A DNA stretch of 64,000 bases. Origin: Styela clava (lineage: Eukaryota). The notes under the pieces were generated by a model that saw only the letters and a program-made list of their open reading frames with translations, was not told the origin of the DNA and made no database searches. The translations under genes and the position numbers were made by a program. Shown piece after piece: positions 1 through 45,843 of the stretch. How positions within the stretch are numbered: the stretch's first letter is position 1; every line of letters starts with the position of its first letter. The DNA lies in assembly GCF_964204865.1 (NCBI RefSeq), contig NC_135258.1, positions 5,394,001 to 5,458,000 on the forward strand, read 5' to 3'.

Positions 1-1030
1 ATAGCCGACCGGAAAGCGTGGAGAGTCTTGAGGGTCTAAAAAGCGTTCCAAGCTACGAGTACGACCCATATTGTCTATTTCAATTGTGACCACGCGGTGG
101 TGGTTGTCCATTAAGTTTCCCATATAAGGCTAAAACTACAAGAAAAACAAAAATTACTTCCTGCAAAAACAGAAAATTTCACTTTAATAATAAGAATGGA
201 AATTGCTACCCTTTAGCAAAAAAAATAACTCAACCTAGCTTACCAAACATATTACATCCTGGGTGAGGCGGTAGGATTGAATTTATATCTGAGATTTTGA
301 ACTGCGTGTCCATTTTCGCTGATTCGTTCATTTCTATTGAGAGAACACGGTAGTTCCTAAACTGGTGTCCGTGGACCCCTGGGCCTGGCGGTTCGTGTTG
401 ACTGCACAGGGGGCCCGCAACATTATGAGTCTAAAACATTTACAAAAATATCATAATCTTATCGAAGTGCCGTTAGCCAGTATTTACCGTTAGTATGTTT
501 CGATTCAGACTTTTGTGAGTTATATTTTGTCAAAGGAAACATTATACTTCTTCGTTGGTTAGGCACAGAAATTGATACGACATAGGATGGGGGTTCGTCA
601 AAAATATAATTCACAAACAGGGGTTCGCGGCTCAAAAAGTTTAGAAAACCCGGTGCCAGAGAATGTCATCGGATATGTATATCCTACTTTCTACTACATA
701 ATGCCAGAATCACACACGCAGAATACTAAGTCTGATGATCCATCAACGTAATATCTACATAGGATAAATCTTAGCTATTTGACTTGTACAGTGAATAAAA
801 TCCCAAGTTTCGGTTTCCATTTATATATGACGTAATTGTACGCCTAAACAACGTAGCCATTACTAACCAGGGAACTATTATTTTTAAAAGGCGTCCGGCA
901 TAGTCTACAGAATTTATTACGCCCAATGAGGCGGAGGGCATAGAATTTGTATCCGAGATTTTAACTTGCATTTTTATTGTATTTGTCTGTTTCTCTTGAG
1001 GAAACGCGGAAGTGAATGTCATCGGAAATA

Positions 1031-1199
1031 TAGGGTGTCCATGAAGTCTTGGAAATTTTTAAATTTACGAAGAGAATTTATCGAAACTACAAATCGTTTT
1101 GTCCTGCAGATATATTAGATGAAATAAAAATATTTAGATATATTGAGAACTGACTTCATAACAAAATTGAAATTGTGGACGGACTTCATGGACACCCTA
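1031..1199. mobile_element. Tc1/mariner(pogo)-type MITE
   Basis: 18-bp TIRs TAGGGTGTCCATGAAGTC / GACTTCATGGACACCCTA flanked by TA on both sides. Related copies occur at about 20823-21018, in the other ZF spacers and at 47897-48091. Confidence 0.75.
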
Positions 1200-4100
1200 T
1201 ATAACCTTTCTACGACTCAGTGCTTGAACGACGCATAAAAGTCTGATGTTCTATCGATGCACTATTTCCATTAGATTAATGTTAGGTTTTGACTGGCGTA
1301 GCCAAGAATAATTCTAAGTTTCGACACAGTAACATAACGGTGATCTCGTTGGCGGGGAGTCATAATGAGACGTAATCAATGGATTGGATTTTTTACGTTC
1401 ATTCTCGCGCCTACTAAGGTTTTCCGATTTTGTGTTATGGCACCATATTGTTTTATTTACACTACAATGCCTGCTTTCTAAGATCTTAATTCAGTGGTTT
1501 TCATAATGTAACACGGAAACAATTGCATTTATTCTGGGTAAAACATAGTATTAGAATTAGACATACAGGGTGCTTCTCTCCCCTGGGATAAATATGTAAA
1601 TTCTATCCTATCCATATAGTCCTTTTACAATTTCGTCATGAAGTCAGTTATCAATATATATTAACCGGATTTGTTATTTTTAATCAGTAATTGTTTACGT
1701 GATTTCTACTTCATTTAATACATCTTTAAGGCCCAAGACAATATATGGTATCGATAAATTTCATTTGCAATTTTGACAAATCTTACGACCTTATGGACAC
1801 CCTATATTCTGAATTTTCGATAATTGTTTTTTCTTCTTCTATATTAAGTTTTATTCTAGGAATTTTGAATTTGTGATTAAATGATCTGTTACAATAATAT
1901 CAAAATGATAATGGCATTTGTATATAAACGGTTCTTCGAATATGGAACTTGTGGTCCGTCATAATCTAAAAAAAAAAATGAAAGAGGAATATTCGCCATA
2001 ATTGCCGACAAAATGCGTGTATGGTTGTCAACGGTGGGACCTCGTTTCAATTTTATTCACTTTCAATCGTAATAACTTTGTTTTGAATTGATTGGCCCTG
2101 CGATTTCTTAGTTTGTAACGAGATGAGAAAGTTTGAGAACCAATGCCATGTGAGAACCTTGGGTGTCGCTGCTAATAATCAGCTTTGGTTCCCCGTGGTG
2201 TCCATTCCACAGTAAAACTGTGCGCTTACTTTATTCCTCCAAATTTGTGCACGATTGATTTTTTGAGTCTAGCGAAGTAAACGCCGTAACTCGTTGAATA
2301 ACGCTAAACAAAAGTGTAATCTGTCTGGCGTGAAATGAAATTCGCAAATTCGCGCTCGACAGGCTGTCTATTTCAAGTCAAACCCACCCAATCTATGATT
2401 AAGCCGGTTTGTCCCATGTCATATAGGGTATAGCGTGATTTGAAGAAATAAAATTCGGGCGATATTTTTGAATCACATTTTTCTATGGCGTTGTTAGCAG
2501 TTACAGCATTTACATTAACATAACATTTTTGTCTGGCGTTATTTGAGCACTTACGGCGTGTGGGTTTCAGACACGATTTTTCAGGGGTAGGAAAAATAAA
2601 CTTGTCCTAACTACACAATTGCCTGTCTCAAAATACTGATAGACTTTTTCTTATAAACATATTCTCGCTATGTCTATTCTATGTCTTGCGAAACCTCAAC
2701 TGATAGTTACACGAATTATTGTCTCAGTAAAGCTCGACTCTACTGTTCTGAATGATGAAACCTTTAATTTATGTTAATTGTCCAAATAAACGTCCATCAA
2801 CCACGCTATTCTACACAAAAACATGTAATACCAATATGGGAAATATGTCGTCATTGCGTGGGACAGTCAGGAAATATGAAGGAGTGGAAAAATCCGTATA
2901 AATGACTTAGGAGGCATCAAAACAATGAGAATGTCCGAGGTCATGTATGATTACAGATATGTTTATCTACGGCTAAGCTAAATATTAAACACGACTTAGG
3001 TAATACTATAATTATGCATGAGCATTCAGGGTAGGCCTTACCTAGGCTGTGTGCTCGCCAGCTTTTACATTTACGCGGAGAGAGGTGTTTCCTAACTCAG
3101 GGGTTGGTACAATTTTGGGTACTCATGTAGTATGTGTACCAGGTTAGGTCATAATTTTCCTTATTTGAGTTTCATTACGAGTTCGGGGACTGTCTGTGTT
3201 AGCTAAGTGAATATATCCCCTGCCCATAGATTCCAGTCCCGTTACACAACTTGACGTAAAGTGACGATTAGTGACTTGAGAAATTGTGTTTTGTATTTGG
3301 CTTACCATCTGTACTGGAAGGAATATACGCCACTTCCTGAATATTCAAATACAAATGTATTTATATCCTCGAACTGTATTTACATATTGTTTGCATTAAT
3401 TGTCTAGTCGATAGCGAAAAATCTCGCCTACACGTTTTAAATGATTAATAATCTATGTTTTGCAATTATCTTGAATAAAAACGTGTTATTTATAAGTAAA
3501 TGGATATCGGTTCTCATATTTTGTATTTCAAAATCTCGCCATTCTCTTTTTTGTAAGTTTGTTTTCGGTAAATGAAAATAGAAGACATCCTCCGAAAATA
3601 AGCCCTAGTGTTATTTTTCGGATAAAAATTGAAATAAGACCCAGTCTTATTTTCGGGGAAACACGATATTTATACGAAGATAATTATGTTTAGGATAAAT
3701 CTGAATGTGTGTTTGCTATGAATAACCGACACATTTTTTTTACACACGTATTGCTGTATTGGGCCATCGAGTAAATGAGTGCGGGTTGGCTTAATTGAAC
3801 TTGCTGGTGTAATTCACGTAAACGCTGGTCGACTACGGATTCTAAAAACAAATACCTGGTCAACTATTCCATACCCGACATAGACTTGTAAACGTGGCCG
3901 TGGTTCATCATATGATTAAGCCGTCGGCTTTCATCTTCTCAACAGCCTTTTCTCCATTTTTAGTTCTATTGCGAGTTCGTGGACTGTCTGCGTTAGCCAA
4001 GTGAATATACCCCGTGCCCATAGGCTTCCGTCCCTTTACACAACTTGATGTTTATTAAGGCGAAAAAAAATAGTTACCTCCATATTGGTACACATACGTC

Positions 4101-6654
4101 TGGAGCGCCCAAAAATAATGTATGAAACACGTCATAACAGAATTTTTCACTCTCGAATTTGAGCCTCTCATATTTACCGAAAACATAAGTGATGTTTTCT
4201 TGACCTTCCAGAAATTTTTTTTTATAACAATTGCAAATTTTTCACTTGCTGTCAATCATCAGTTTCTATTTATTTTCCTTGTTTAATTAAACTCTTTCAT
4301 CAACATAGAACGCGGGGGCTAAAGGTCACCTTTTTATTTACTAATGTGATGACGACAATGCCAAGAAGTCATGAATTGGTGACACTATTGTGTTTCTGAA
4401 ATTTCCCGTGTTTGGAGTCGGACGAAGTCTGGTATCTGCTGAAGAGAATATATATCAATGTCCAAATTAAAAAATCAATGTTCAATACATTCATTTTGCG
4501 TTTCTCAAGTTCCTCTATGAAGATATATATCTCAGCAAGAAAAATATCTAAATCGGCGCCGTCGGATGGTCCTTCATTTCACGCTCTCGCTCTCTACGGC
4601 TTTCTTTCCATCATTCCCTATTGGTGTTGTTCGCTACGTCTCTTTGTTCATTTGCTGAACTTTGCCTCTATGCCGTCATCAAGCCTGAATTCAAATTCTG
4701 ATGATTCAACTACCAAGCCTCGCTTATCAATGATAACAGTTCTCCAACAATTAAGTTGCTAAAACTTGGCTAATGTTTATTTAGATATTTGAACCTTGGG
4801 TGTCGCTGCTTGATAACCAGCTTTGGTTCCCCGCGGCTTTCCTTTCCCAGTGAAATGTGTATTCGATATTATTTATTTGTCTTAATTTTGCATGTATACT
4901 TTTTTTACTGAATGGAAAAAATAATCTTGACTATGACTATGACTTATCTGGTTTGCGACACATTGTAGCAGAATTACAGCCGAAAATAAAGCAAAGGAAA
5001 CATTTACTTATTCGAATGAAAGCCGTTCACGGGCTAATCGTGTGTATTGCTTAATATTTGTTTACTTTAATATTACTCACCATCATGATTCAAGAATTCA
5101 AGATTCAATTTATTGTCTCAATGTTACAGCCGACAGGATAGATGCGGCGTGGATAAGACGTGTCAATGTGCATCTGTGAACCACGATTTTAACAAGAAAT
5201 TGTTTCCCGTACAAAATCGCGTTAGCGCTACAATCTGAAAACAATTCGCTAAGTGGGCAGGCACACGTGCTGAGCAAAGCGCGGTGTCTTCACGCTCAAT
5301 TCCAGGCTTCGGCATTATTGTACGAGCTTTTCCTTTGCCAGTACACCAGAAATAGTTTCATAAATATGATATATAGTGCTCGTTTACCTGGTAGATATTT
5401 TCGTAGATATTTTCGTGTTCAGAGATTAGTATGGAATAGGATTTTTTTTATTCATCCAAAGGACAGAGGGAAGAGGAAAGTCGATAAGTCAGCATAATCA
5501 TACCGGTACTGTTTACCACGACTTATGGTCCAGTTGCACTACCGGTACCGTACGGTACCGGTATCAGACTATTCGCCAACAGCCGAGATTACTCGATTAG
5601 GCTGTCTTCTCTGACTTTTAGGGTATCCTAAATCTATAATGATCCTCTAAATACAGAAATATCTGAATTCGCTTGGCATTGGTGTACCGTACCGGTACTG
5701 ATAATTAGAGATAAAAGCTCAGCGGTGTGGCGCATTGTCTAGCCAGTAGTCAGATCGTGGTAAGCGTAAAGATAATGCTTGCCACGGCACCTCGACTGTT
5801 GATTACCTGAGATGGGATTCCCTCTAGATTGGGAAACGCTGGATTACCATTCTTTGAAATAACTTTTCAGATAGAGAGACATAGTCCCGTTTCAGAGAAT
5901 CCCATTTTGACGAAGAAAAAACACCCCTCCTTTGGGGGAGATCTTGACATTGTTGTCCCTCAATATCAATAAAATGAAGTTGCACAAAAAACTACAAAGA
6001 AGCGCAAGAATAGACCGATTTACTGGAGGAAATAATTTTCTAACATGGCATTCGAGAGTGTTTAGCAAAAAACGGCAATATTGATCATGTGGCAGCCGCA
6101 ATTAATTTAGATTATTATCGAGGCAAGCATGGCGCGATATGACGCATCTGCCGTCGTGTCAGACGCCCCTCGTGAGACACATGCAGTGTTTGTTTGTTTC
6201 ATTGAACCAAATGAAGAGATATTCTTGGAATTTGCATAGTGCGTCGTACTGTAGGTGGGGTTTTTTGTATATTTCATTCGCGGAAAAAAGCAATATTATG
6301 GCCTTTCAGGTCTAATTTAAAACTAACTAACTGAATGGTTTTACTAAATTTCAGCATTATCCCACGCAGATAATCAGAGGTCCGATGACAAACACATTCT
6401 TAACGTTTAGAAAACGGAATGAGAAATCAAAGATTTACATTTTTTCTGTATTTTTGAAACAGTGCTTGTAGTTCCGCCATTTTGGATTAATGACCTTATA
6501 TATTATGAATAGTGAATTATGAATAGTGCTTTGAGAAATTGCTTTAAACATTTTATTTTTCTATTTCAATTTTCTTATTATGAATTAAATATCATTAGTT
6601 ATATTGTCATATTCTCGAATGTAACATAAATTGTTACTTGATGTATTAATATTC

Positions 6655-6966
6655 ATGGGAAATCATCCTTCATCAAAATTTTCTCCTGAATTTGAAGAAT
6701 TGCGAAAAAAGTCTTTTAGAAAAGCAAAACCACGGTTAATAACAGGAACGTCCGTCGGTGATATACTCTTCCTTGTTGTCTTCACGTCAGCGTTTGCTTA
6801 CACAATTTATACCGAAGGAGCAAGGCGACAAGCGGATCCGAACTCTTCAATTTATACTGTTGATAATCCTCCCCCTACTTTATTTGAAAGAGGTCAAAAA
6901 ATCTATAAAGAAAAAGGATTTGAGGGATTATTGGGAATAGATAAAAACGATGGGAAGACTAAATAA
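6655..6966 (+). CDS. Small single-pass membrane protein (103 aa), weakly COA3/CCDC56-like, overlapping the NOP2 start
   Basis: First in-frame ATG is at 6655 (the ORF-track TTG start at 6631 is not used here). The protein has a basic segment, then a hydrophobic helix VGDILFLVVFTSAFAYTIY, then a charged tail. There is no ATG in any frame between 6658 and 6949. The TAA stop at 6964-6966 lies 17 nt into NOP2. Confidence 0.6.
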   Translation: MGNHPSSKFSPEFEELRKKSFRKAKPRLITGTSVGDILFLVVFTSAFAYTIYTEGARRQADPNSSIYTVDNPPPTLFERGQKIYKEKGFEGLLGIDKNDGKTK

Positions 6967-9232
6967 AGATGAGATAAACCAGAGAGTTAGGGGGCCTGGT
7001 AAAAAAGCAAGACGGCAACAAGATTTCGAAATGCCAAAGGTATGGAAAGATGAACAAAAAGAAGGAAAAGGAATGACTAGTAGAGCGAAAAAACGAATGA
7101 AAACTCGCGAACAAAAACAGAAAAAAACGAAGACAACGCAACTTGACGAAGTCGGACAAGAAGAGAATGGGATAACGGACAACGATGTTTATATGGAGAA
7201 CGATAAACTTGGTGTGGATTATTCGAATAACAACGGCGATGGATTAAAACTTTTTTCTGGTGACGATGATTCAGAATTGGAAATGGATGATGATTACGGC
7301 GAGCAAATGGACAGCGAGGACGAGGCTAAAGCTGCAATAAAACAAAAAGTTTTAGAAGAAATGCTGAGCGATGAGGAAGGGACAGAAACCGAGGATGAAA
7401 ATGATACAGGAACACTTCTTGATGTAGAAAAAAAGACGAAAGCTCTACAGAAAAAAAGAATGGAAATTAACATCGCAGTCAAGGACGATCAAATTCAAAC
7501 GAATATCCAAGAATCTGAAGCGTTTGTTCTACCAAGTGGGCAAGAGATAGAAAAGGATAGCATTCCTGCTGCTGGTTTGGAAGTTATTCAGCAAAGAATA
7601 AAAGATATTCTTTCTATATTATCAGATTTTGCCAACAAGAGAGATCCAAATCGAAAAAGGAAAGAGTATTGCACTGTGTTGTGTAAAGATTTATGTACAT
7701 ATTACAGCTATAATGAATTCCTTATGTCCAGGCTCATGGAATTGTTTTCCTTATCTGAACTAGTTGAATTCTTGGAAGCAAACGAAGTACAACGTCCGAT
7801 CACCATTCGTACAAATACTCTGAAGACAAGAAGAAGAGACCTGGCACAGGCTTTGATTGGCCGCGGAGTGAACTTGGATCCGCTCGGTAACTGGACTAAG
7901 GTTGGGTTGGTTGTCTATGATTCTTCTGTTCCTATCGGAGCAACGCCGGAGTACTTAGCTGGTCATTATATACTTCAGGGAGCATCAAGTTTTCTTCCTG
8001 TTATTGCATTAGCTCCTCAACCAGGAGAAAGAATTCTTGACATGTGTGCTGCCCCTGGCGGCAAAACGTCTTACGTTGCTCAATTAATGAAAAATACTGG
8101 CCTGGTGTTTGCGAATGATGTCAATGCTGCTAGAATACGTGCTGTAGTTGGAAATCTGCACAGACTCGGGGTTAGTAATTCTGTCGTTTCGAATTATGAT
8201 GGGAGATCGTTTCCTACCATTATGGGTAATTTTTCTCGGGTTTTACTGGATGCTCCATGCAGTGGAACCGGTGTGATATCTAAAGATCCTTCAATAAAAA
8301 CAAATAAGGACGAAGACGATATAAAACGATGTTCCCATTTACAAAAAGAATTAATTTTGTCGGCTATTGATTCTTGCAATGCTAAATCAGATACAGGTGG
8401 ATATATTGTTTATTGTACTTGTTCTATTCTGGTTGAGGAAAATGAGGATGTGGTGAATTACGCTTTGAAAAGGAGAAACGTAAAACTTGTTGAAACTGGC
8501 CTCGATTTCGGCACAGCTGGATTCGTAAATTACCGTAATTTCCGATTCCATCCTTCGCTGAAATTAACAAAACGAGTGTACCCACATACTCAAAATATGG
8601 ACGGTTTTTACATTGCAAAATTGAAGAAATTTTCGAACACAATTCCTGTCGTGAAAGACGAAGAAATTGAAGGAGGGGAAGATGTTGAGATTGAAAATGC
8701 TGAAAAGACAGAAAAAACAGAATCAGAAACAGAAAAACCACAGGGAAAAAAGAAAATTCAAGATTCAAAAGGAACAAAACGGAAAGTAGATGCAATGAAA
8801 CAGCTTAAAAAGTATCAAAAGAATAAACATAAACCCGGTGCTTTAATTCGTCCAATCATTGGAGTGAAAGAGAAAAAACGTAGTATTACTAAATACATAG
8901 AGGCCAAACAAGGTAAAATAGCACCAAAGAACATAAAGAAAGAAAAGAACGTGCCCCAAGCCAACCCAAAAAAGCAAAAGTCAAAGAAACCTGATCAGAA
9001 GTTGAACAAAATAAACAAAAATACAAAACCGAAAATTAACGAAACGAAAAAAGTGGACATTCTACCCGCCGTGAAAAAGGACTCTGAAAAGTCGCCCAAA
9101 ATTGAAAAACCTGCGACTGAAAAACCTAAAATAGAATCAGGTATTCAGCAAAAAAGTCCCAAAGCTAAAAGTAAGCGTCGTATGAGCATGAAGGAGATTA
9201 TACGAATGCGACAGAACCTTCTAGACGAGTGA
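6950..9232 (+). CDS. NOP2: NOP2/NOL1/NSUN1 28S rRNA cytosine-C5 methyltransferase, intronless
   Basis: N-terminal MGR...RGPGKKARRQ, an acidic tract, RTNTLKTRRRDLAQALI, SAM motif DMCAAPGGKT, catalytic DAPCSG and TCS motifs, PHTQNMDGFY, and a Lys-rich tail. Confidence 0.97.
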   Translation: MGRLNKDEINQRVRGPGKKARRQQDFEMPKVWKDEQKEGKGMTSRAKKRMKTREQKQKKTKTTQLDEVGQEENGITDNDVYMENDKLGVDYSNNNGDGLKLFSGDDDSELEMDDDYGEQMDSEDEAKAAIKQKVLEEMLSDEEGTETEDENDTGTLLDVEKKTKALQKKRMEINIAVKDDQIQTNIQESEAFVLPSGQEIEKDSIPAAGLEVIQQRIKDILSILSDFANKRDPNRKRKEYCTVLCKDLCTYYSYNEFLMSRLMELFSLSELVEFLEANEVQRPITIRTNTLKTRRRDLAQALIGRGVNLDPLGNWTKVGLVVYDSSVPIGATPEYLAGHYILQGASSFLPVIALAPQPGERILDMCAAPGGKTSYVAQLMKNTGLVFANDVNAARIRAVVGNLHRLGVSNSVVSNYDGRSFPTIMGNFSRVLLDAPCSGTGVISKDPSIKTNKDEDDIKRCSHLQKELILSAIDSCNAKSDTGGYIVYCTCSILVEENEDVVNYALKRRNVKLVETGLDFGTAGFVNYRNFRFHPSLKLTKRVYPHTQNMDGFYIAKLKKFSNTIPVVKDEEIEGGEDVEIENAEKTEKTESETEKPQGKKKIQDSKGTKRKVDAMKQLKKYQKNKHKPGALIRPIIGVKEKKRSITKYIEAKQGKIAPKNIKKEKNVPQANPKKQKSKKPDQKLNKINKNTKPKINETKKVDILPAVKKDSEKSPKIEKPATEKPKIESGIQQKSPKAKSKRRMSMKEIIRMRQNLLDE

Positions 9233-40591: not shown

Positions 40592-41377
40592 TCATGAGTC
40601 ATCGCTATGATGGACATTCCCTCTGTTTGGAAGAACACCAATTTCAGAATTGATGTCTTCATTCCGACTTAAAGCCATGAGAAGCCCAAAGTATGTTGTT
40701 TTTGAAGATTTAGAAAGTTCACTGTGAACATGTTGGGAGTCTGGACTTGGCGCACTTTTTGGTAGCTTTACTTTTAGCTTCTCAATCGCTTCATAAAAAG
40801 CTTGACTCTGTACACCTTCAGTGTTCCCCTGTGAAAAATTTCTCTTTTTCTGTTGCCAGGTATCAGATGTGGGAACAACAATGGATGAACCATTAATCAA
40901 ATGTTCATAAACTTCTTTACATAAAGTTAAATATTCCTCGTAATAAAACTGAATTTGAAATGCATATACAAAGTCTATAAAGGACATTAAACAGTCAAGA
41001 GCATCTTCCATTAGCACAATATGTGCAGTTCTCTGAACAATGTCCAATGGAAAATCATAACATAACAAACATAGTAGGGAATGATATTCTTTACCACTCA
41101 GCAGTTCGCCGTAGCCTGCAAGTTTATTAAAGCATCTCCAGAAACATGAGATTAAACTTTTTCTGTTTTTTGTTGTGGCAGAAACATATTCAAACTCTCT
41201 AAATAAAGTATTTGTTCCTTCATGTGCACTTTTAAAATAATCCGATAAAAATCGAGCGGGAACCATTTTTGGAGTTTCATCTTTTTGTTCTAGTAGTTGA
41301 TTAATTGCATCTTCCATGTATTTCACAATTTCATGACGCTCCAGATATTCACTCAAAGATTCTCTTGCTTGGGACAT
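40592..41377 (-). CDS. CSTPP1: Centriolar satellite-associated tubulin polyglutamylase complex regulator 1 (C11orf49/UPF0705) ortholog, intronless
   Basis: EYL..H....YMEDA..QLLE, ARF...YF, LFREF, FWRCF, KEYH.LL.LLC.DFPL, IVLM.DA.DCLMSF.DF..AFQIQFYY and LMALS match the human protein as I recall it. Acceptor AG at 41401-41400, 22 nt before the ATG. Confidence 0.9.
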   Translation of the reverse strand: MSQARESLSEYLERHEIVKYMEDAINQLLEQKDETPKMVPARFLSDYFKSAHEGTNTLFREFEYVSATTKNRKSLISCFWRCFNKLAGYGELLSGKEYHSLLCLLCYDFPLDIVQRTAHIVLMEDALDCLMSFIDFVYAFQIQFYYEEYLTLCKEVYEHLINGSSIVVPTSDTWQQKKRNFSQGNTEGVQSQAFYEAIEKLKVKLPKSAPSPDSQHVHSELSKSSKTTYFGLLMALSRNEDINSEIGVLPNRGNVHHSDDS

Positions 41378-42910: not shown

Positions 42911-45843
42911 TAACGTGGTATGAACAGCAAGAATGTTAGAATTTATTATTCTAATCAAGTCCATTACACACCCAACTAAACTGAACAAAGGGGTACCGAC
43001 CATTAGGGATCAACCTATTACAGTATTAACAAGCCACTACATTCAGATATTGGTTTCCGATCCCAGCAATTTTTTCCCAAACGCTAATTACCGGTACTCT
43101 AGCATTATTGTTGAAATATTTAGCTATTCATCCTTGAATAAAGTTTGCCTGCGTTAGCCATAACAAAACTGCAGCAAGATTGGTGAGAAAACGCGTGGTC
43201 TTTCAAGAGCTAGTTGCATGCTTTCAAATTAACTGTTGGGTTAGTTAGTTTCAGTCAGTTATTAAACTCGTTAGTATAGTTTACGAACTGTGTTTGTTAC
43301 GATCTGAGAGTTGAAAAATCCAGATTTCTCGGTGGTTACAAGAAAACCGTTAGCTGCAACGCATGTCTGAGTGACGTTGCCTTGGCGACATCTCTCATGC
43401 GTGATCGGCGCGTTTCGTCAAGAATATTTTCTTTGTTTTTTTATTTGTGTTTCTTAGGTTTGAATATAAATCAAACAATTCAATGTTCATACATACCGGT
43501 ACGGTACCCTATTCCGCTGTCTCATACTGCTGTACTGCCTTCCATTGGAAGAAAAACGTCTGCATCTCCTCTAGGACAAACAAAAAGAAACCTAGCAGTT
43601 TCTGCCAAAGTATCCCAGTGTGTTGATCAATCAGCTCTACTAGCAATATTTCAATCATTACTACTTAGCCATATTCGATATTGTTGTTCAGTCTGCCTTC
43701 ATGGTAATAAAACACTTGTCTCAAAACTGCAGAGTATTTGTAATAATTTTTTAAGAACAGTTTTTTTAAGTGTAGACTCTTACTTCAAATCACTAAATAA
43801 ACCTAAGGTTGAATATATGATGAAATTTGAAATATTATCCCTAGCTCACGACTTATGAAACGGTATTGTGACATGCATGAGTATATTTTTTTTTAAATAT
43901 ATAGGTAGCTGACATACCCGAATGATATTTTCTTTAAATAACTTATCACTTCACGTTGTGTTTTTATCTTTTTCTAGCTGTGATGTCCTTATCATACACG
44001 CTTGGTCCTATGTTTGAGTGGTGGTATAAGTGCAACTAGGCGAACAGTAGAGCTATGTTGGATTCTCCCCTTCAGATTTTAGTTTGCTGTGGGTCATTGT
44101 AATTGGATGTGGTTTTTATATCATTTATGTATGCATGCATGTTATGTTAAGGATTGGTATTGGTGTTTGAGTTGACTTGTTGGCCAAGGTATAGATAGTA
44201 AAATTTTGTGTGTTTTTTTGCATGGTGTGATAAATTTTTCCCGGTCCCAAGCAGAATGTCATCATAGATCATCTATCCATCGCTACCGGTATATAATGAC
44301 AATACATCCCATTTAATCAAACAATTATTTTTTGCCTGTGATAAATAGTTCAGAGCGTTCCCCTTCACCCAATCATTGAAACATCTACTCGCGGTTTTAA
44401 TTTTTGTTTTTCAGGTTACTTCAAAGTGATTAAATGAAGTAAAACACATAAGGAAAAAATCAAAAAAAGACTCCGATATCCTGTGAAATAACAACCTTAT
44501 TCCTATATCCTTGTCTGAAATCAATACCCAAGAATGAAAAACCTCACTTACACTCTTTGTAACCAATTTATTTCCACATCCTACTTTACTTAATTATAGT
44601 AATTTTACTGTTACCGGTAACTTTAATTACTTATTTCAATCTGGACTACAAATTGGCAATAATAGGATCTAATTTGGGGAATGAAATGGTCTGTCTCGCC
44701 CACCTCTTCATGCACCCAATTCTGGCAACTTTGGTTGGGCAACTTGGCATTTGACTCCAACTATAATCAGCTTGGCAATATGTTTTCAATAGAATCTTCC
44801 TTTTATATTTTATTTAACGATTAGAAGATCGATCAATTTGGCAATGGCAACCATTACAAAAATATCAATATGGTGTGGCAAATAATTTTTTTCTTTTCTA
44901 GTATTTATTTATTTTTTTGTTTACCGTATAGTATACCCTAAATTTATCGCGTTTTATTCTTACCCAAATAACTTCTCAGTGGTTGTGTGTGTGTATTTGC
45001 ACCTGCCAACCTTCCAGGCAGCCGCAATTATAAGTAACCAAGAACCAAGTTATCTACTCTTCAGTTTCATCTTGGTTTACTACAAATCCGCGCTGTTTCC
45101 CAATTGCTCCACACCAAAATATAGAAACATAACTAAAAACTTACTCTTGGGACCAGAACTAATATTATGTTGAATGCTTGCAGGGGCATATGAAAATCTG
45201 AGCAGCAAATTAAATTTTGACAATTACTTAACGCCAATTTGTTGTAACACTCAAGAATATTGATGTCTATGGAAAAACAGGTTGTGAGGACACAAAACTT
45301 GTCTTTGTGTAAGCAGGTAGCTGCAAAGCTAATTTCATGGTGGCAAATGCTAGCGACAAAATATGAGAATATAACAATAATTTTGGGTCGGTGTCTATCG
45401 TTTTCAAGATTCCATTGTGCTACGCAACCAGACAGTCATGCACATGAAAACATATTAGATATCCTGGATATATATTTTCGTGAATAACATACATGCGATT
45501 CAATATATACATATACAAGTTTTTCAAAATGCATTGTAACGTAAGAGAACAAATATTTCAACCATTAGTAAACAAACTAAGTTGTATGGTGAAATTACTT
45601 TATCTCATGATTCAAAGTAAGTGTTCTATCTCCATCAATTTCAGTTTAACTGCCACATCTTTAGACAAGCAGTTCTTCAAAATAAGCTTTGAAAGGCAGA
45701 AATATCCATTTCACCAAATGCAGTGGTGTGTGTAGGCCACCACCACTTCAATAGTTCTCCCATTCCACCTCGCTTGAGAGAGAGAAGTGCTCAGATGACA
45801 TCCTGGAGATTCACACTTTACAGCATAATAAGCGATGCATTTT

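What the first reader, a model, noticed from the sequence alone, without database searches (positions are those of the whole stretch)
6655..6966. Apparent bicistronic small-protein/NOP2 locus built for leaky scanning
Seen: (1) a 103-codon ORF whose stop lies 17 nt inside NOP2, in another frame. (2) Its AUG context is weak (ttcATGg, T at -3), whereas NOP2 (acgATGg), the kelch gene, all five ZF genes and CSTPP1 have A at -3. (3) There is no ATG in any frame across the 292 nt between the two starts, where a rough base-composition estimate expects about 5. (4) The NOP2 N-terminus MGR...RGPGKKAR matches the conserved start, so 6950 is the true start. Established: a weak first AUG, an AUG-free interval and a strong second AUG are the hallmarks of leaky-scanning bicistronic mRNAs. 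Inference: one mRNA makes both a membrane microprotein and the nucleolar rRNA methyltransferase, and the overlap makes each ribosome translate one or the other. Two tiny upstream ORFs (ATG-TAA at 6619, ATG-TAT-TAA at 6641) could tune this if they are transcribed.
Basis: partly seen in the sequence, partly recalled or inferred. Interest (0 to 1): 0.85.

Follow-up and report, generated by a model that had tools for sequence, protein, structure and literature searches.

The report
Overlapping upstream ORF before sea-squirt NOP2
Just upstream of the sea squirt's ribosome-biogenesis gene NOP2 lies a 103-codon reading frame that looks like a real small membrane protein gene and overlaps the NOP2 start, but I could not test whether one mRNA makes both proteins.

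Summary
In this Styela clava window, ORF 6655-6966 (103 codons, one hydrophobic helix) ends 17 nt inside intronless NOP2 (ATG 6950), in another frame. No ATG lies in the 292 nt between the two starts (5.3-5.8 expected). The upstream ATG has T at -3; NOP2 and seven other genes have A.

New evidence favours a coding ORF. Its codon usage sits at the median of real-gene segments and above 124 of 129 other ORFs. It is the best-scoring open segment in window 1-7000. It is the only ORF outside the NOP2 coding sequence in 528 kb of strand sequence that spans an ATG-free run of 295 nt or more.

Against: no homologue was found anywhere (Pfam, 1.84 billion protein representatives, metagenomes). It is single-copy. 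It is not COA3, which lies on another contig.

The key claim, one mRNA carrying both ORFs, could not be tested. Ascidians trans-splice most genes, and plausible unpaired acceptors at 6790 and 6890 could remove the upstream ATG from NOP2 mRNA.

Verdict: a plausible bicistronic, overlapping-uORF locus (about 0.4), unproven and of moderate interest. The scan had noted this stretch once before.

The parts
6655..6966 (+). 103-codon upstream ORF (MGNHPSS...KNDGKTK*). Predicted helices at residues 11-23, 34-59 (hydrophobic) and 76-92. The stop lies 17 nt inside NOP2, in the +1 frame.
   Evidence: sequence and translation; codon LLR 0.178 bits/codon in frame, against 0.037 and -0.057 off frame; top total LLR in 1-7000. 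AF2 single-sequence pLDDT 64.7. ESM recognition 2431, above the 2300 threshold.
6950..9232 (+). Intronless NOP2 (28S rRNA cytosine-C5 methyltransferase), 760 aa.
   Evidence: Pfam PF01189, 7e-71; 100% identity over residues 230-580 to the Styela clava NOP2 entry; 98% identity over the whole protein, with a conserved N-terminus.
6658..6949 (+). 292-nt interval with no ATG in any frame, between the two start codons.
   Evidence: The 12 other genes examined have their nearest upstream ATG only 7-96 nt away.
6754..6831 (+). Coding stretch for the predicted hydrophobic helix (residues 34-59). T-rich DNA.
   Evidence: helix 34-59. Sequence.
6769..6790 (+). Candidate unpaired 3' splice (trans-splice) acceptor: ttccttgttgtcttcacgtcAG.
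   Evidence: pyrimidine fraction 0.79, CAG. Prediction only.
6867..6892 (+). Candidate acceptor: polypyrimidine tract tcctccccctactttattt followed by gaaAGAG, 58-60 nt before the NOP2 ATG. It has a weak (10 of 13) resemblance to the 3' part of the Ciona spliced leader.
   Evidence: The exact 20-mer is single-copy in the genome, so it is not an SL RNA gene.
6580..6649 (+). Three minimal uORFs: ATG-AAT-TAA at 6580, ATG-TAA at 6619 and ATG-TAT-TAA at 6641. The last one stops 5 nt before ATG 6655.
6500..6650 (.). AT-rich trough (GC 17-18%) with TATA-like strings (6497-6505, 6600-6606). GC rises to 41-48% inside the ORF. Possible core promoter, so the TSS could lie on either side of ATG 6655.
   Evidence: composition; sequence. 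The promoter reading is inference.
6962..6967 (+). AATAAA hexamer that contains the upstream ORF's stop codon. A possible poly(A) signal for a short separate transcript.
   Evidence: It is also forced by NOP2 codons L-N-K, so it may be coincidental.

Best explanation
The 103-codon frame is a genuine, lineage-restricted coding ORF in the 5' leader of Styela clava NOP2. It acts as an overlapping upstream ORF on the NOP2 transcript.

Because it ends 17 nt past the NOP2 AUG in another frame, a ribosome that starts at AUG-6655 cannot also translate NOP2. NOP2 is made only by ribosomes that pass AUG-6655. They could pass by leaky scanning (U at -3, possibly also closeness to the cap). They could also pass because they have just finished the mini-uORF that stops 5 nt upstream and are not yet ready to reinitiate. 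They would then cross the 292-nt AUG-free stretch to the strong AUG-6950.

Shown: the anatomy, its statistical rarity and the coding-like codon usage.
Inferred: that both ORFs sit on one mature mRNA, that the upstream ORF is translated, and that its product (a predicted single-pass membrane protein) is functional.
For: Anatomy is confirmed.

AUG-free leader:
- NOP2 has 295 nt without an ATG; 12 other genes have 7-96 nt.
- P = 0.004 among genomic 292-nt windows and 0.023 under the local Markov model.

Open frame:
- P = 0.002; jointly with the AUG lack, 8e-5.
- Of 39 ATGs in 528 kb of strand sequence that are followed by 295 nt or more without an ATG, only this one and one inside the NOP2 coding sequence open an ORF spanning the gap.

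Coding signal:
- Codon usage trained on independent long ORFs gives 0.178 bits/codon. Real-gene chunks give 0.161 +/- 0.107 and other ORFs 0.004 +/- 0.086; 5 of 129 reach it.
- The signal is frame-specific.
- It has the highest total score of any open segment in 1-7000.
- ESM recognition is 2431, above 2300.
- AF2 predicts three helices, mean pLDDT 64.7, without an alignment.

Acceptor: unlike neighbouring genes, NOP2 has no strong acceptor within 25 nt of its ATG.

Precedents for the mechanism: sloth1/sloth2 (PMC9681215) and the SLC35A4 uORF protein (PMC12183330).
Against: No RNA evidence of any kind was obtainable.

No homologue was found:
- Pfam.
- 5.8-billion-cluster word search.
- HMMER against 1.84 billion representatives. 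The only hit, P0121, is a repetitive artefact.
- Metagenome contigs.
- No paralogue in the genome itself.

The S. clava NOP2 entry starts at MGR, and the databases hold no entry for the small ORF.

In the ascidian Ciona, 50-80% of genes are SL trans-spliced (PMC4691747, PMC11155486). Acceptor-like sites at 6790 and 6890 could remove AUG-6655 from NOP2 mRNA.

The hydrophobic helix is coded by a T-rich tract of the kind that non-coding DNA also yields.

The AUG lack is not a codon-choice signal (P = 0.31).

A crude multiple-testing estimate is about 1e-4 per gene by chance. Over the thousands of genes the scan has read, that gives roughly 0.3 such loci before the codon-usage evidence is counted.
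Confidence: 0.4

Rival explanations
1. The two ORFs are never on the same mature mRNA. NOP2 pre-mRNA is SL trans-spliced at an unpaired acceptor inside the ORF (6790 or 6890), or transcribed from a start site downstream of 6655. NOP2 mRNA then has an ordinary AUG-free leader of 60-160 nt. The upstream ORF is either a separate small orphan gene read from the untrimmed or short (AATAAA 6962) transcript, or part of a discarded outron.
For: - Trans-splicing is the rule in the ascidian Ciona: about half of genes (PMC4691747), or 9850 of 12,397 non-operonic genes (PMC11155486). Outrons average about 440 bp.
- Sites 6790 (Y-rich tract + CAG) and 6890 (19-nt Y-rich tract + AAG) resemble acceptors.
- Neighbouring genes carry strong acceptors just before their ATGs, so such processing is common at this locus.
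- Earlier notes of this scan report SL RNA genes and many operon candidates in this genome.
- AATAAA overlaps the ORF's stop.
Against: - It leaves the ATG-free stretch upstream of the acceptor (133-235 nt) to chance, roughly 0.01-0.07.
- Both acceptors are weaker than those of neighbouring genes. The 6890 site has A at -3 and a gaa spacer; the 6790 site lies in the T-rich helix-coding tract.
- A Ciona-type operon with no intercistronic DNA cannot give a complete upstream product here, because the ORF's stop lies downstream of any possible NOP2 acceptor (PMC1488885 describes that architecture).
Confidence: 0.3
2. Chance ORF. The region is a non-coding leader, outron or promoter-proximal stretch, and the open frame with its hydrophobic segment has no biological meaning.
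For: - No homologue anywhere and single-copy.
- 32 other ORFs of 100-249 codons lie outside the long ORFs (250 codons or more) in 264 kb.
- T-rich DNA readily translates into hydrophobic helices.
- An antisense frame of the same stretch also scores 0.131 bits/codon, which shows how noisy the statistic is at this length.
- The finding was picked from a scan of hundreds of windows.
Against: - Joint probability of open frame and ATG lack is 8e-5 under a conservative local model.
- Codon usage is in the top 4% of ORFs and at the median of real genes.
- It is the best-scoring open segment in 7 kb.
- ESM recognition is above the level reached by only 9% of shuffled or reversed sequences.
Confidence: 0.2
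3. A purely regulatory overlapping uORF. Translation of the frame represses NOP2, as an ATF4 uORF2-like gate tuned by the mini-uORFs, but the peptide itself has no function.
For: - The architecture matches: tiny uORFs at 6580, 6619 and 6641, then a long out-of-frame uORF overlapping the main start.
- Overlapping uORFs are described as predicted to be the strongest translational repressors (abstract of PMC13405301, seen).
- NOP2 is a growth-linked nucleolar protein (my own knowledge).
Against: - 103 codons is far longer than repression needs.
- The codon usage looks selected.
- The last mini-uORF stops only 5 nt before AUG-6655. That would favour bypass of the long uORF, not the ATF4-type reinitiation at it.
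- There is no evidence that the mini-uORFs are transcribed.
Confidence: 0.1

Closest known systems
Drosophila sloth1/sloth2 bicistronic transcript (SMIM4/UQCC5 and BRAWNIN/UQCC6 orthologues), PMC9681215
   Same: Two ORFs sit on one transcript. The first has a non-optimal Kozak context and the second an optimal one. A small single-pass membrane peptide is encoded upstream. Reporter assays there showed that the downstream ORF is read by leaky scanning.
   Different: The sloth ORFs do not overlap (5 nt apart). Both are small, conserved paralogues with shown function and a shown single transcript. Here the downstream ORF is a 760-aa nucleolar enzyme, the ORFs overlap by 17 nt, the upstream ORF has no known relative, and the single transcript is unproven.
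SLC35A4 upstream-ORF protein (AltSLC35A4 / SLC35A4-MP), PMC12183330
   Same: A 103-codon upstream ORF encodes a single-pass membrane protein in the leader of an unrelated main ORF. The arrangement is bicistronic, with the main ORF thought to be reached partly by leaky scanning.
   Different: AltSLC35A4 is described there as highly conserved, with orthologues reported in many vertebrates, detected by mass spectrometry and placed in the inner mitochondrial membrane. From my recollection of its sequence it does not resemble this ORF, and I did not align the two. The Styela ORF has no evidence of expression.
ATF4-type overlapping inhibitory uORF (delayed reinitiation); general knowledge
   Same: One or more short uORFs are followed by a long uORF that overlaps the main start codon out of frame, so translating it excludes the main ORF.
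   Different: In ATF4 the spacing allows reinitiation at the long uORF. Here the last mini-uORF ends 5 nt before it. The long uORF here is about twice as long and looks coding.
Ciona SL-resolved operons lacking intercistronic DNA, PMC1488885
   Same: Same-strand genes with no spacer in an ascidian, where each primary transcript may yield either the upstream or the downstream mRNA but not both.
   Different: In Ciona the upstream mRNA ends at the downstream gene's acceptor, so its stop codon lies upstream of that acceptor. Here the upstream stop lies inside the downstream coding sequence, so that processing would truncate the small ORF.
COA3/CCDC56 (Pfam PF09813), proposed by another first-reader note
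   Same: About 100 aa, with one transmembrane helix preceded by basic residues. The Drosophila gene is known as a bicistronic passenger (my own knowledge).
   Different: No Pfam match even at E = 1. No BLASTP alignment to the genome's own COA3. That canonical COA3 lies on another contig and scores above the Pfam cut-off.

Membership tests
Leaky-scanning bicistronic mRNA (uORF-encoded protein plus main ORF) | Both ORFs are present on one mature, capped mRNA | not testable with these tools
Leaky-scanning bicistronic mRNA (uORF-encoded protein plus main ORF) | Upstream AUG in a weaker context than the downstream AUG | tested here: met
   ttcATGg against acgATGg. A at -3 in 8 of 8 large ORFs of the window. 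G at +4 keeps the first site from being very weak.
Leaky-scanning bicistronic mRNA (uORF-encoded protein plus main ORF) | No AUG between the two start codons | tested here: met
   0 ATG in 292 nt, with 5.3-5.8 expected. P = 0.004 empirical and 0.023 under the local Markov model.
Leaky-scanning bicistronic mRNA (uORF-encoded protein plus main ORF) | The upstream ORF is a real coding sequence (conserved or translated) | tested here: inconclusive
   Codon usage and ESM recognition favour coding. No homologue was found. Translation was not testable.
COA3/CCDC56 (PF09813) | Match to the Coa3_cc profile | tested here: not met
   No hit at E <= 1. The genome search with PF09813 finds another locus (C18, 32.7 bits) and not this one. 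BLASTP between the two gives no alignment.
Ciona-type SL-resolved operon without intercistronic DNA | The upstream cistron, stop codon included, ends at or before the downstream trans-splice acceptor | tested here: not met
   The stop at 6964-6966 lies downstream of the NOP2 ATG at 6950, and any acceptor must lie upstream of 6950.
Ciona-type SL-resolved operon without intercistronic DNA | The downstream gene carries the spliced leader | not testable with these tools
   No reads were available. The S. clava SL sequence could not be established. Matches to the Ciona SL pattern were a tRNA array and dispersed repeats.
ATF4-type delayed-reinitiation leader | A short uORF followed, at a distance that permits reinitiation, by a long uORF overlapping the main start out of frame | tested here: not met
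   The overlap and the frame offset are met. The last mini-uORF stops 5 nt before AUG-6655, too close for efficient reinitiation by the established model.
NOP2/NSUN1 rRNA m5C methyltransferase (downstream gene) | RsmB/F methyltransferase domain and the conserved N-terminus MGR..RGPGKK | tested here: met
   PF01189 at 7e-71. 98% identity to the Styela clava entry, with invariant N-terminal residues.

The most novel reading that the evidence does not exclude
In a chordate that trans-splices most of its mRNAs, a young, lineage-specific membrane microprotein is co-encoded with the essential nucleolar methyltransferase NOP2. The 17-nt out-of-frame overlap makes each ribosome choose one product. Optional SL trans-splicing at an acceptor inside the small ORF (6790 or 6890) switches the locus between a bicistronic and a NOP2-only mRNA. 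That would be a splice-controlled bicistron.
Probability: 0.12. Interest if true: 0.6.

Novelty: new member of a known kind. Interest (0 to 1): 0.35.

Why it matters
If one mRNA does carry both frames, this would be a clean natural case of an overlapping, protein-coding uORF gating a core ribosome-biogenesis enzyme. It would sit in an animal lineage where spliced-leader trans-splicing is thought to strip harmful upstream AUGs from leaders. The locus would show how bicistronic translation and trans-splicing coexist, and it would add an orphan membrane microprotein to the ascidian proteome. If NOP2 turns out to be trans-spliced downstream of 6655, the locus is ordinary: an outron, or a tiny neighbouring gene.

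Tried and rejected
**Homologues of the 103-aa ORF: none found**
- Pfam: only DUF485 at E = 0.13.
- Word-indexed search: nothing.
- HMMER against 1.84 billion representatives: one spurious repetitive hit, P0121.
- ESM Atlas: best score 0.90 to unnamed clusters. Small mitochondrial membrane proteins scored 0.84-0.86, which is only a lead.
- Metagenome contigs and the genome itself: nothing further.

**COA3 idea: rejected**.

**RNA evidence: unavailable**

**Comparative DNA: unavailable**
- The second metagenome scan, with a NOP2 alignment, returned only distant eukaryotes and no tunicate.

**Spliced leader of S. clava: not established**
- The Ciona SL plus GT with up to 2 mismatches hit a roughly 100-copy tRNA-gene array on C3, not SL genes.
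- The 14-mer TCTATTTGAATAAG is 6-fold enriched, but the copies sit in dispersed repeat families and none is followed by GT.
- The SL-like 13-mer at 6879-6891 matches 10 of 13, which is chance level, and its 20-mer is single-copy. I dropped the idea of an SL relic or a NOP2 retrogene.

**Other dead ends**
- The CpG profile was too noisy to place a promoter.
- I considered the ORF as a terminal exon of an upstream gene. No AG lies between the upstream in-frame stop (6622) and ATG 6655, and no coding-like segment lies in 1-6600, so this is unlikely.

Full report
**Organism and setting**

The downstream gene is NOP2. Pfam RsmB/F scores 7e-71. The protein is 100% identical over residues 230-580, and 98% identical overall, to the Styela clava NOP2 entry. 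The window is therefore from the leathery sea squirt S. clava, at G000:C10:5394001-5458000.

NOP2 here is a single 760-codon exon. Its N-terminus (M1 G2 R3 ... R14 G15 P16 G17 K19) is invariant across tunicate and other NOP2 proteins, so ATG 6950 is the true start.

**The observation**

- ATG 6655 opens a 103-codon frame that stops at 6964-6966. That is 17 nt inside NOP2, in the +1 frame.
- The upstream context is ttcATGg and the NOP2 context is acgATGg. All eight large ORFs of the window have A at -3.
- No ATG occurs in any frame across 6658-6949, where 5.3-5.8 are expected.
- The mini-uORFs at 6619 and 6641 exist, with a third at 6580.

**How unusual is it?**

- Only 5 of 1283 ATG-to-ATG gaps in the window reach 295 nt. 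In 528 kb of strand sequence (window plus 200 kb of flanks) the figure is 39 of 10,146.
- Genomic 292-nt windows lack ATG 0.4% of the time. Real coding chunks lack it 0.5% of the time.
- A first-order Markov model trained on the ORF itself, which is therefore conservative, gives P(no ATG) = 0.023, P(102 codons open) = 0.002 and P(both) = 8e-5.
- Of the 39 ATGs followed by 295 nt or more without an ATG, only two open an ORF that spans the gap. One is this ORF. The other lies inside the lysine-rich tail of NOP2 itself.
- For the 12 other genes I could examine, the nearest upstream ATG is 7-96 nt away. NOP2's 295 nt is the outlier.

Two caveats apply.
- Resampling synonymous codons for the same peptide gives zero out-of-frame ATGs in 31% of trials. 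The lack of ATG therefore lies in the amino-acid sequence (no Met, Cys or Trp), not in codon choice.
- At roughly 1e-4 per gene by chance, a scan that has read thousands of genes would meet about 0.3 such loci before any other evidence is counted.

**Is the ORF coding?**

I trained a codon log-likelihood score on five independent long ORFs from the flanks.
- The ORF scores 0.178 bits/codon in frame, against 0.037 and -0.057 in the other two frames.
- 103-codon chunks of the window's real genes score 0.161 +/- 0.107.
- 129 other ORFs of 70-249 codons score 0.004 +/- 0.086. Only five of them reach the candidate. A first version trained on the window's own genes gave the same picture.
- The ORF has the highest total score (18.9 bits) of every stop-free segment on both strands of window 1-7000.

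Other points in favour:
- The ESM Atlas recognition value (2431) passes the 2300 mark. That mark is reached by 91% of proteins of known families and 9% of shuffled or reversed ones.
- AlphaFold without an alignment gives three helices (11-23, 34-59, 76-92) at mean pLDDT 64.7.
- GC rises from 17-18% just upstream (6500-6650) to 41-48% inside the ORF.

Points against:
- An antisense frame of the same stretch scores 0.131, so the statistic is noisy at this length.
- The hydrophobic helix is coded by a T-rich tract that could just as well be a polypyrimidine tract.

**Relatives**

None were found.
- Pfam gives only DUF485 at E = 0.13.
- The word-indexed search of 5.8 billion clusters gives nothing.
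- HMMER against 1.84 billion representatives gives one hit, P0121. It is a 1181-aa repetitive sequence matched in ten weak hydrophobic stretches, which I take as an artefact.
- Metagenome contigs give nothing, and the genome holds one copy only.

The COA3/CCDC56 resemblance proposed in another first-reader note fails. The genome has a canonical 94-aa COA3 on contig 18 that passes the Pfam cut-off, and BLASTP finds no alignment between it and this ORF. If real, the ORF is an orphan restricted to Styela or its close kin.

**The untested link**

I could not test this.
That also blocked access to the 2759-nt contig behind the congener NOP2 P0003.
- The second metagenome scan returned no tunicate DNA.

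**Why the link matters in an ascidian**

- In Ciona about half of genes (PMC4691747), or 9850 of 12,397 non-operonic genes by TSS-seq (PMC11155486), are SL trans-spliced. Outrons average about 440 bp.
- One proposed role of trans-splicing is to remove leader elements that harm translation (PMC4691747).
- Neighbouring genes in this window carry strong polypyrimidine-plus-AG acceptors 3-25 nt before their ATGs. NOP2 has none there.
- Two acceptor-like sites do lie inside the small ORF: ttccttgttgtcttcacgtcAG at 6790, and tcctccccctactttatttgaaAG at 6890. Trans-splicing at either would give a NOP2-only mRNA with an ATG-free leader of 160 or 59 nt.
- A classical Ciona operon without intercistronic DNA (PMC1488885) does not fit. 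The small ORF's stop lies beyond any possible NOP2 acceptor, so the upstream mRNA would lack its stop codon.
- I could not establish the S. clava spliced leader. Ciona-SL-like matches were a tRNA array and dispersed repeats.

**Weighing the readings**

- A bicistronic or overlapping-uORF reading explains both anomalies, the open coding-like frame and the AUG-free run, at once.
- The trans-splicing or separate-transcript reading explains the frame. It leaves 133-235 nt of ATG lack to chance (about 0.01-0.07).
- A plain long non-coding leader explains the ATG lack. It leaves the open frame (0.002) and the codon usage (0.04) to chance.

Given the low prior for true bicistrons, the high prior for trans-splicing, and the absence of any RNA or conservation evidence, I assign:
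- about 0.4 to the overlapping upstream ORF on the NOP2 mRNA, read past by leaky scanning, or bypassed after the mini-uORF that ends 5 nt before it;
- 0.3 to separate mature mRNAs;
- 0.2 to a chance ORF;
- 0.1 to a purely regulatory overlapping uORF.

**Comparison with known systems**

The mechanism would be that of sloth1/sloth2 in Drosophila, where a weak first and strong second Kozak context and leaky scanning were shown by reporters (PMC9681215). It would also match the 103-codon SLC35A4 uORF protein (PMC12183330). The out-of-frame overlap adds the feature of ATF4 uORF2. Membership in that class cannot be claimed until the single transcript and translation are shown.

If true, this is a new member of a known kind, with the extra interest of occurring in a trans-splicing chordate. 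If NOP2 is trans-spliced downstream of 6655, it is ordinary. Interest: 0.35.

Noticed in passing
G000:C3:24847563-24961794 (L016 = C3:24877000-24881000): A roughly 115-kb tandem array of tRNA genes with about 100 units. Rfam finds tRNAs of 73 and 82 nt alternating every 0.5-1.8 kb. Each unit carries the string ATTCTATTTGCATAAG about 40 nt upstream of a tRNA, which mimics the Ciona spliced leader.
   Followed up: partly
window 15932-37287 (+): Five tandem, intronless C2H2 zinc-finger genes of 691, 695, 679, 679 and 679 aa. The last three are equal in length with matching upstream leaders. In the three I inspected, a strong polypyrimidine tract plus AG lies 3 nt before the ATG (candidate trans-splice or 5'UTR-intron acceptors).
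   Followed up: partly
G000: 34 dispersed sites, e.g. L123, L124, L127 and L119, L131, L136: The 14-mer TCTATTTGAATAAG (the last 14 nt of the Ciona spliced leader) is 6-fold over-represented. It sits inside at least two dispersed repeat families and is never followed by GT in the 20 copies read.
   Followed up: partly
G000:C18:18872656-18872763 (L002 1477-1761, minus strand): The canonical COA3 gene of this genome: a 94-aa single-exon ORF scoring 32.7 bits on PF09813.
   Followed up: yes
window 6879-6891: TTATTTGAAAGAG matches 10 of 13 positions of the 3' part of the Ciona SL, exactly at the candidate acceptor 58-60 nt before the NOP2 ATG. With NOP2 being intronless, this raised the idea of an SL relic from a retrocopied mRNA. 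The match is at chance level and the surrounding 20-mer is single-copy.
   Followed up: partly
window 8795-9182 (+): The lysine-rich C-terminal tail of NOP2 is itself ATG-free for 387 nt. Biased real coding sequence can therefore lack ATG over such lengths.
   Followed up: yes
window 6474-6485: CCGCCATTTTGG resembles, from memory, a YY1 core-promoter motif. It lies about 180 nt upstream of ATG 6655 and just before the AT-rich trough. Not tested.
   Followed up: no
window 40592-41377 (-) and 43382-43858 (+): Two ORFs of 261 and 158 aa have no Pfam family at E <= 0.001.
   Followed up: no
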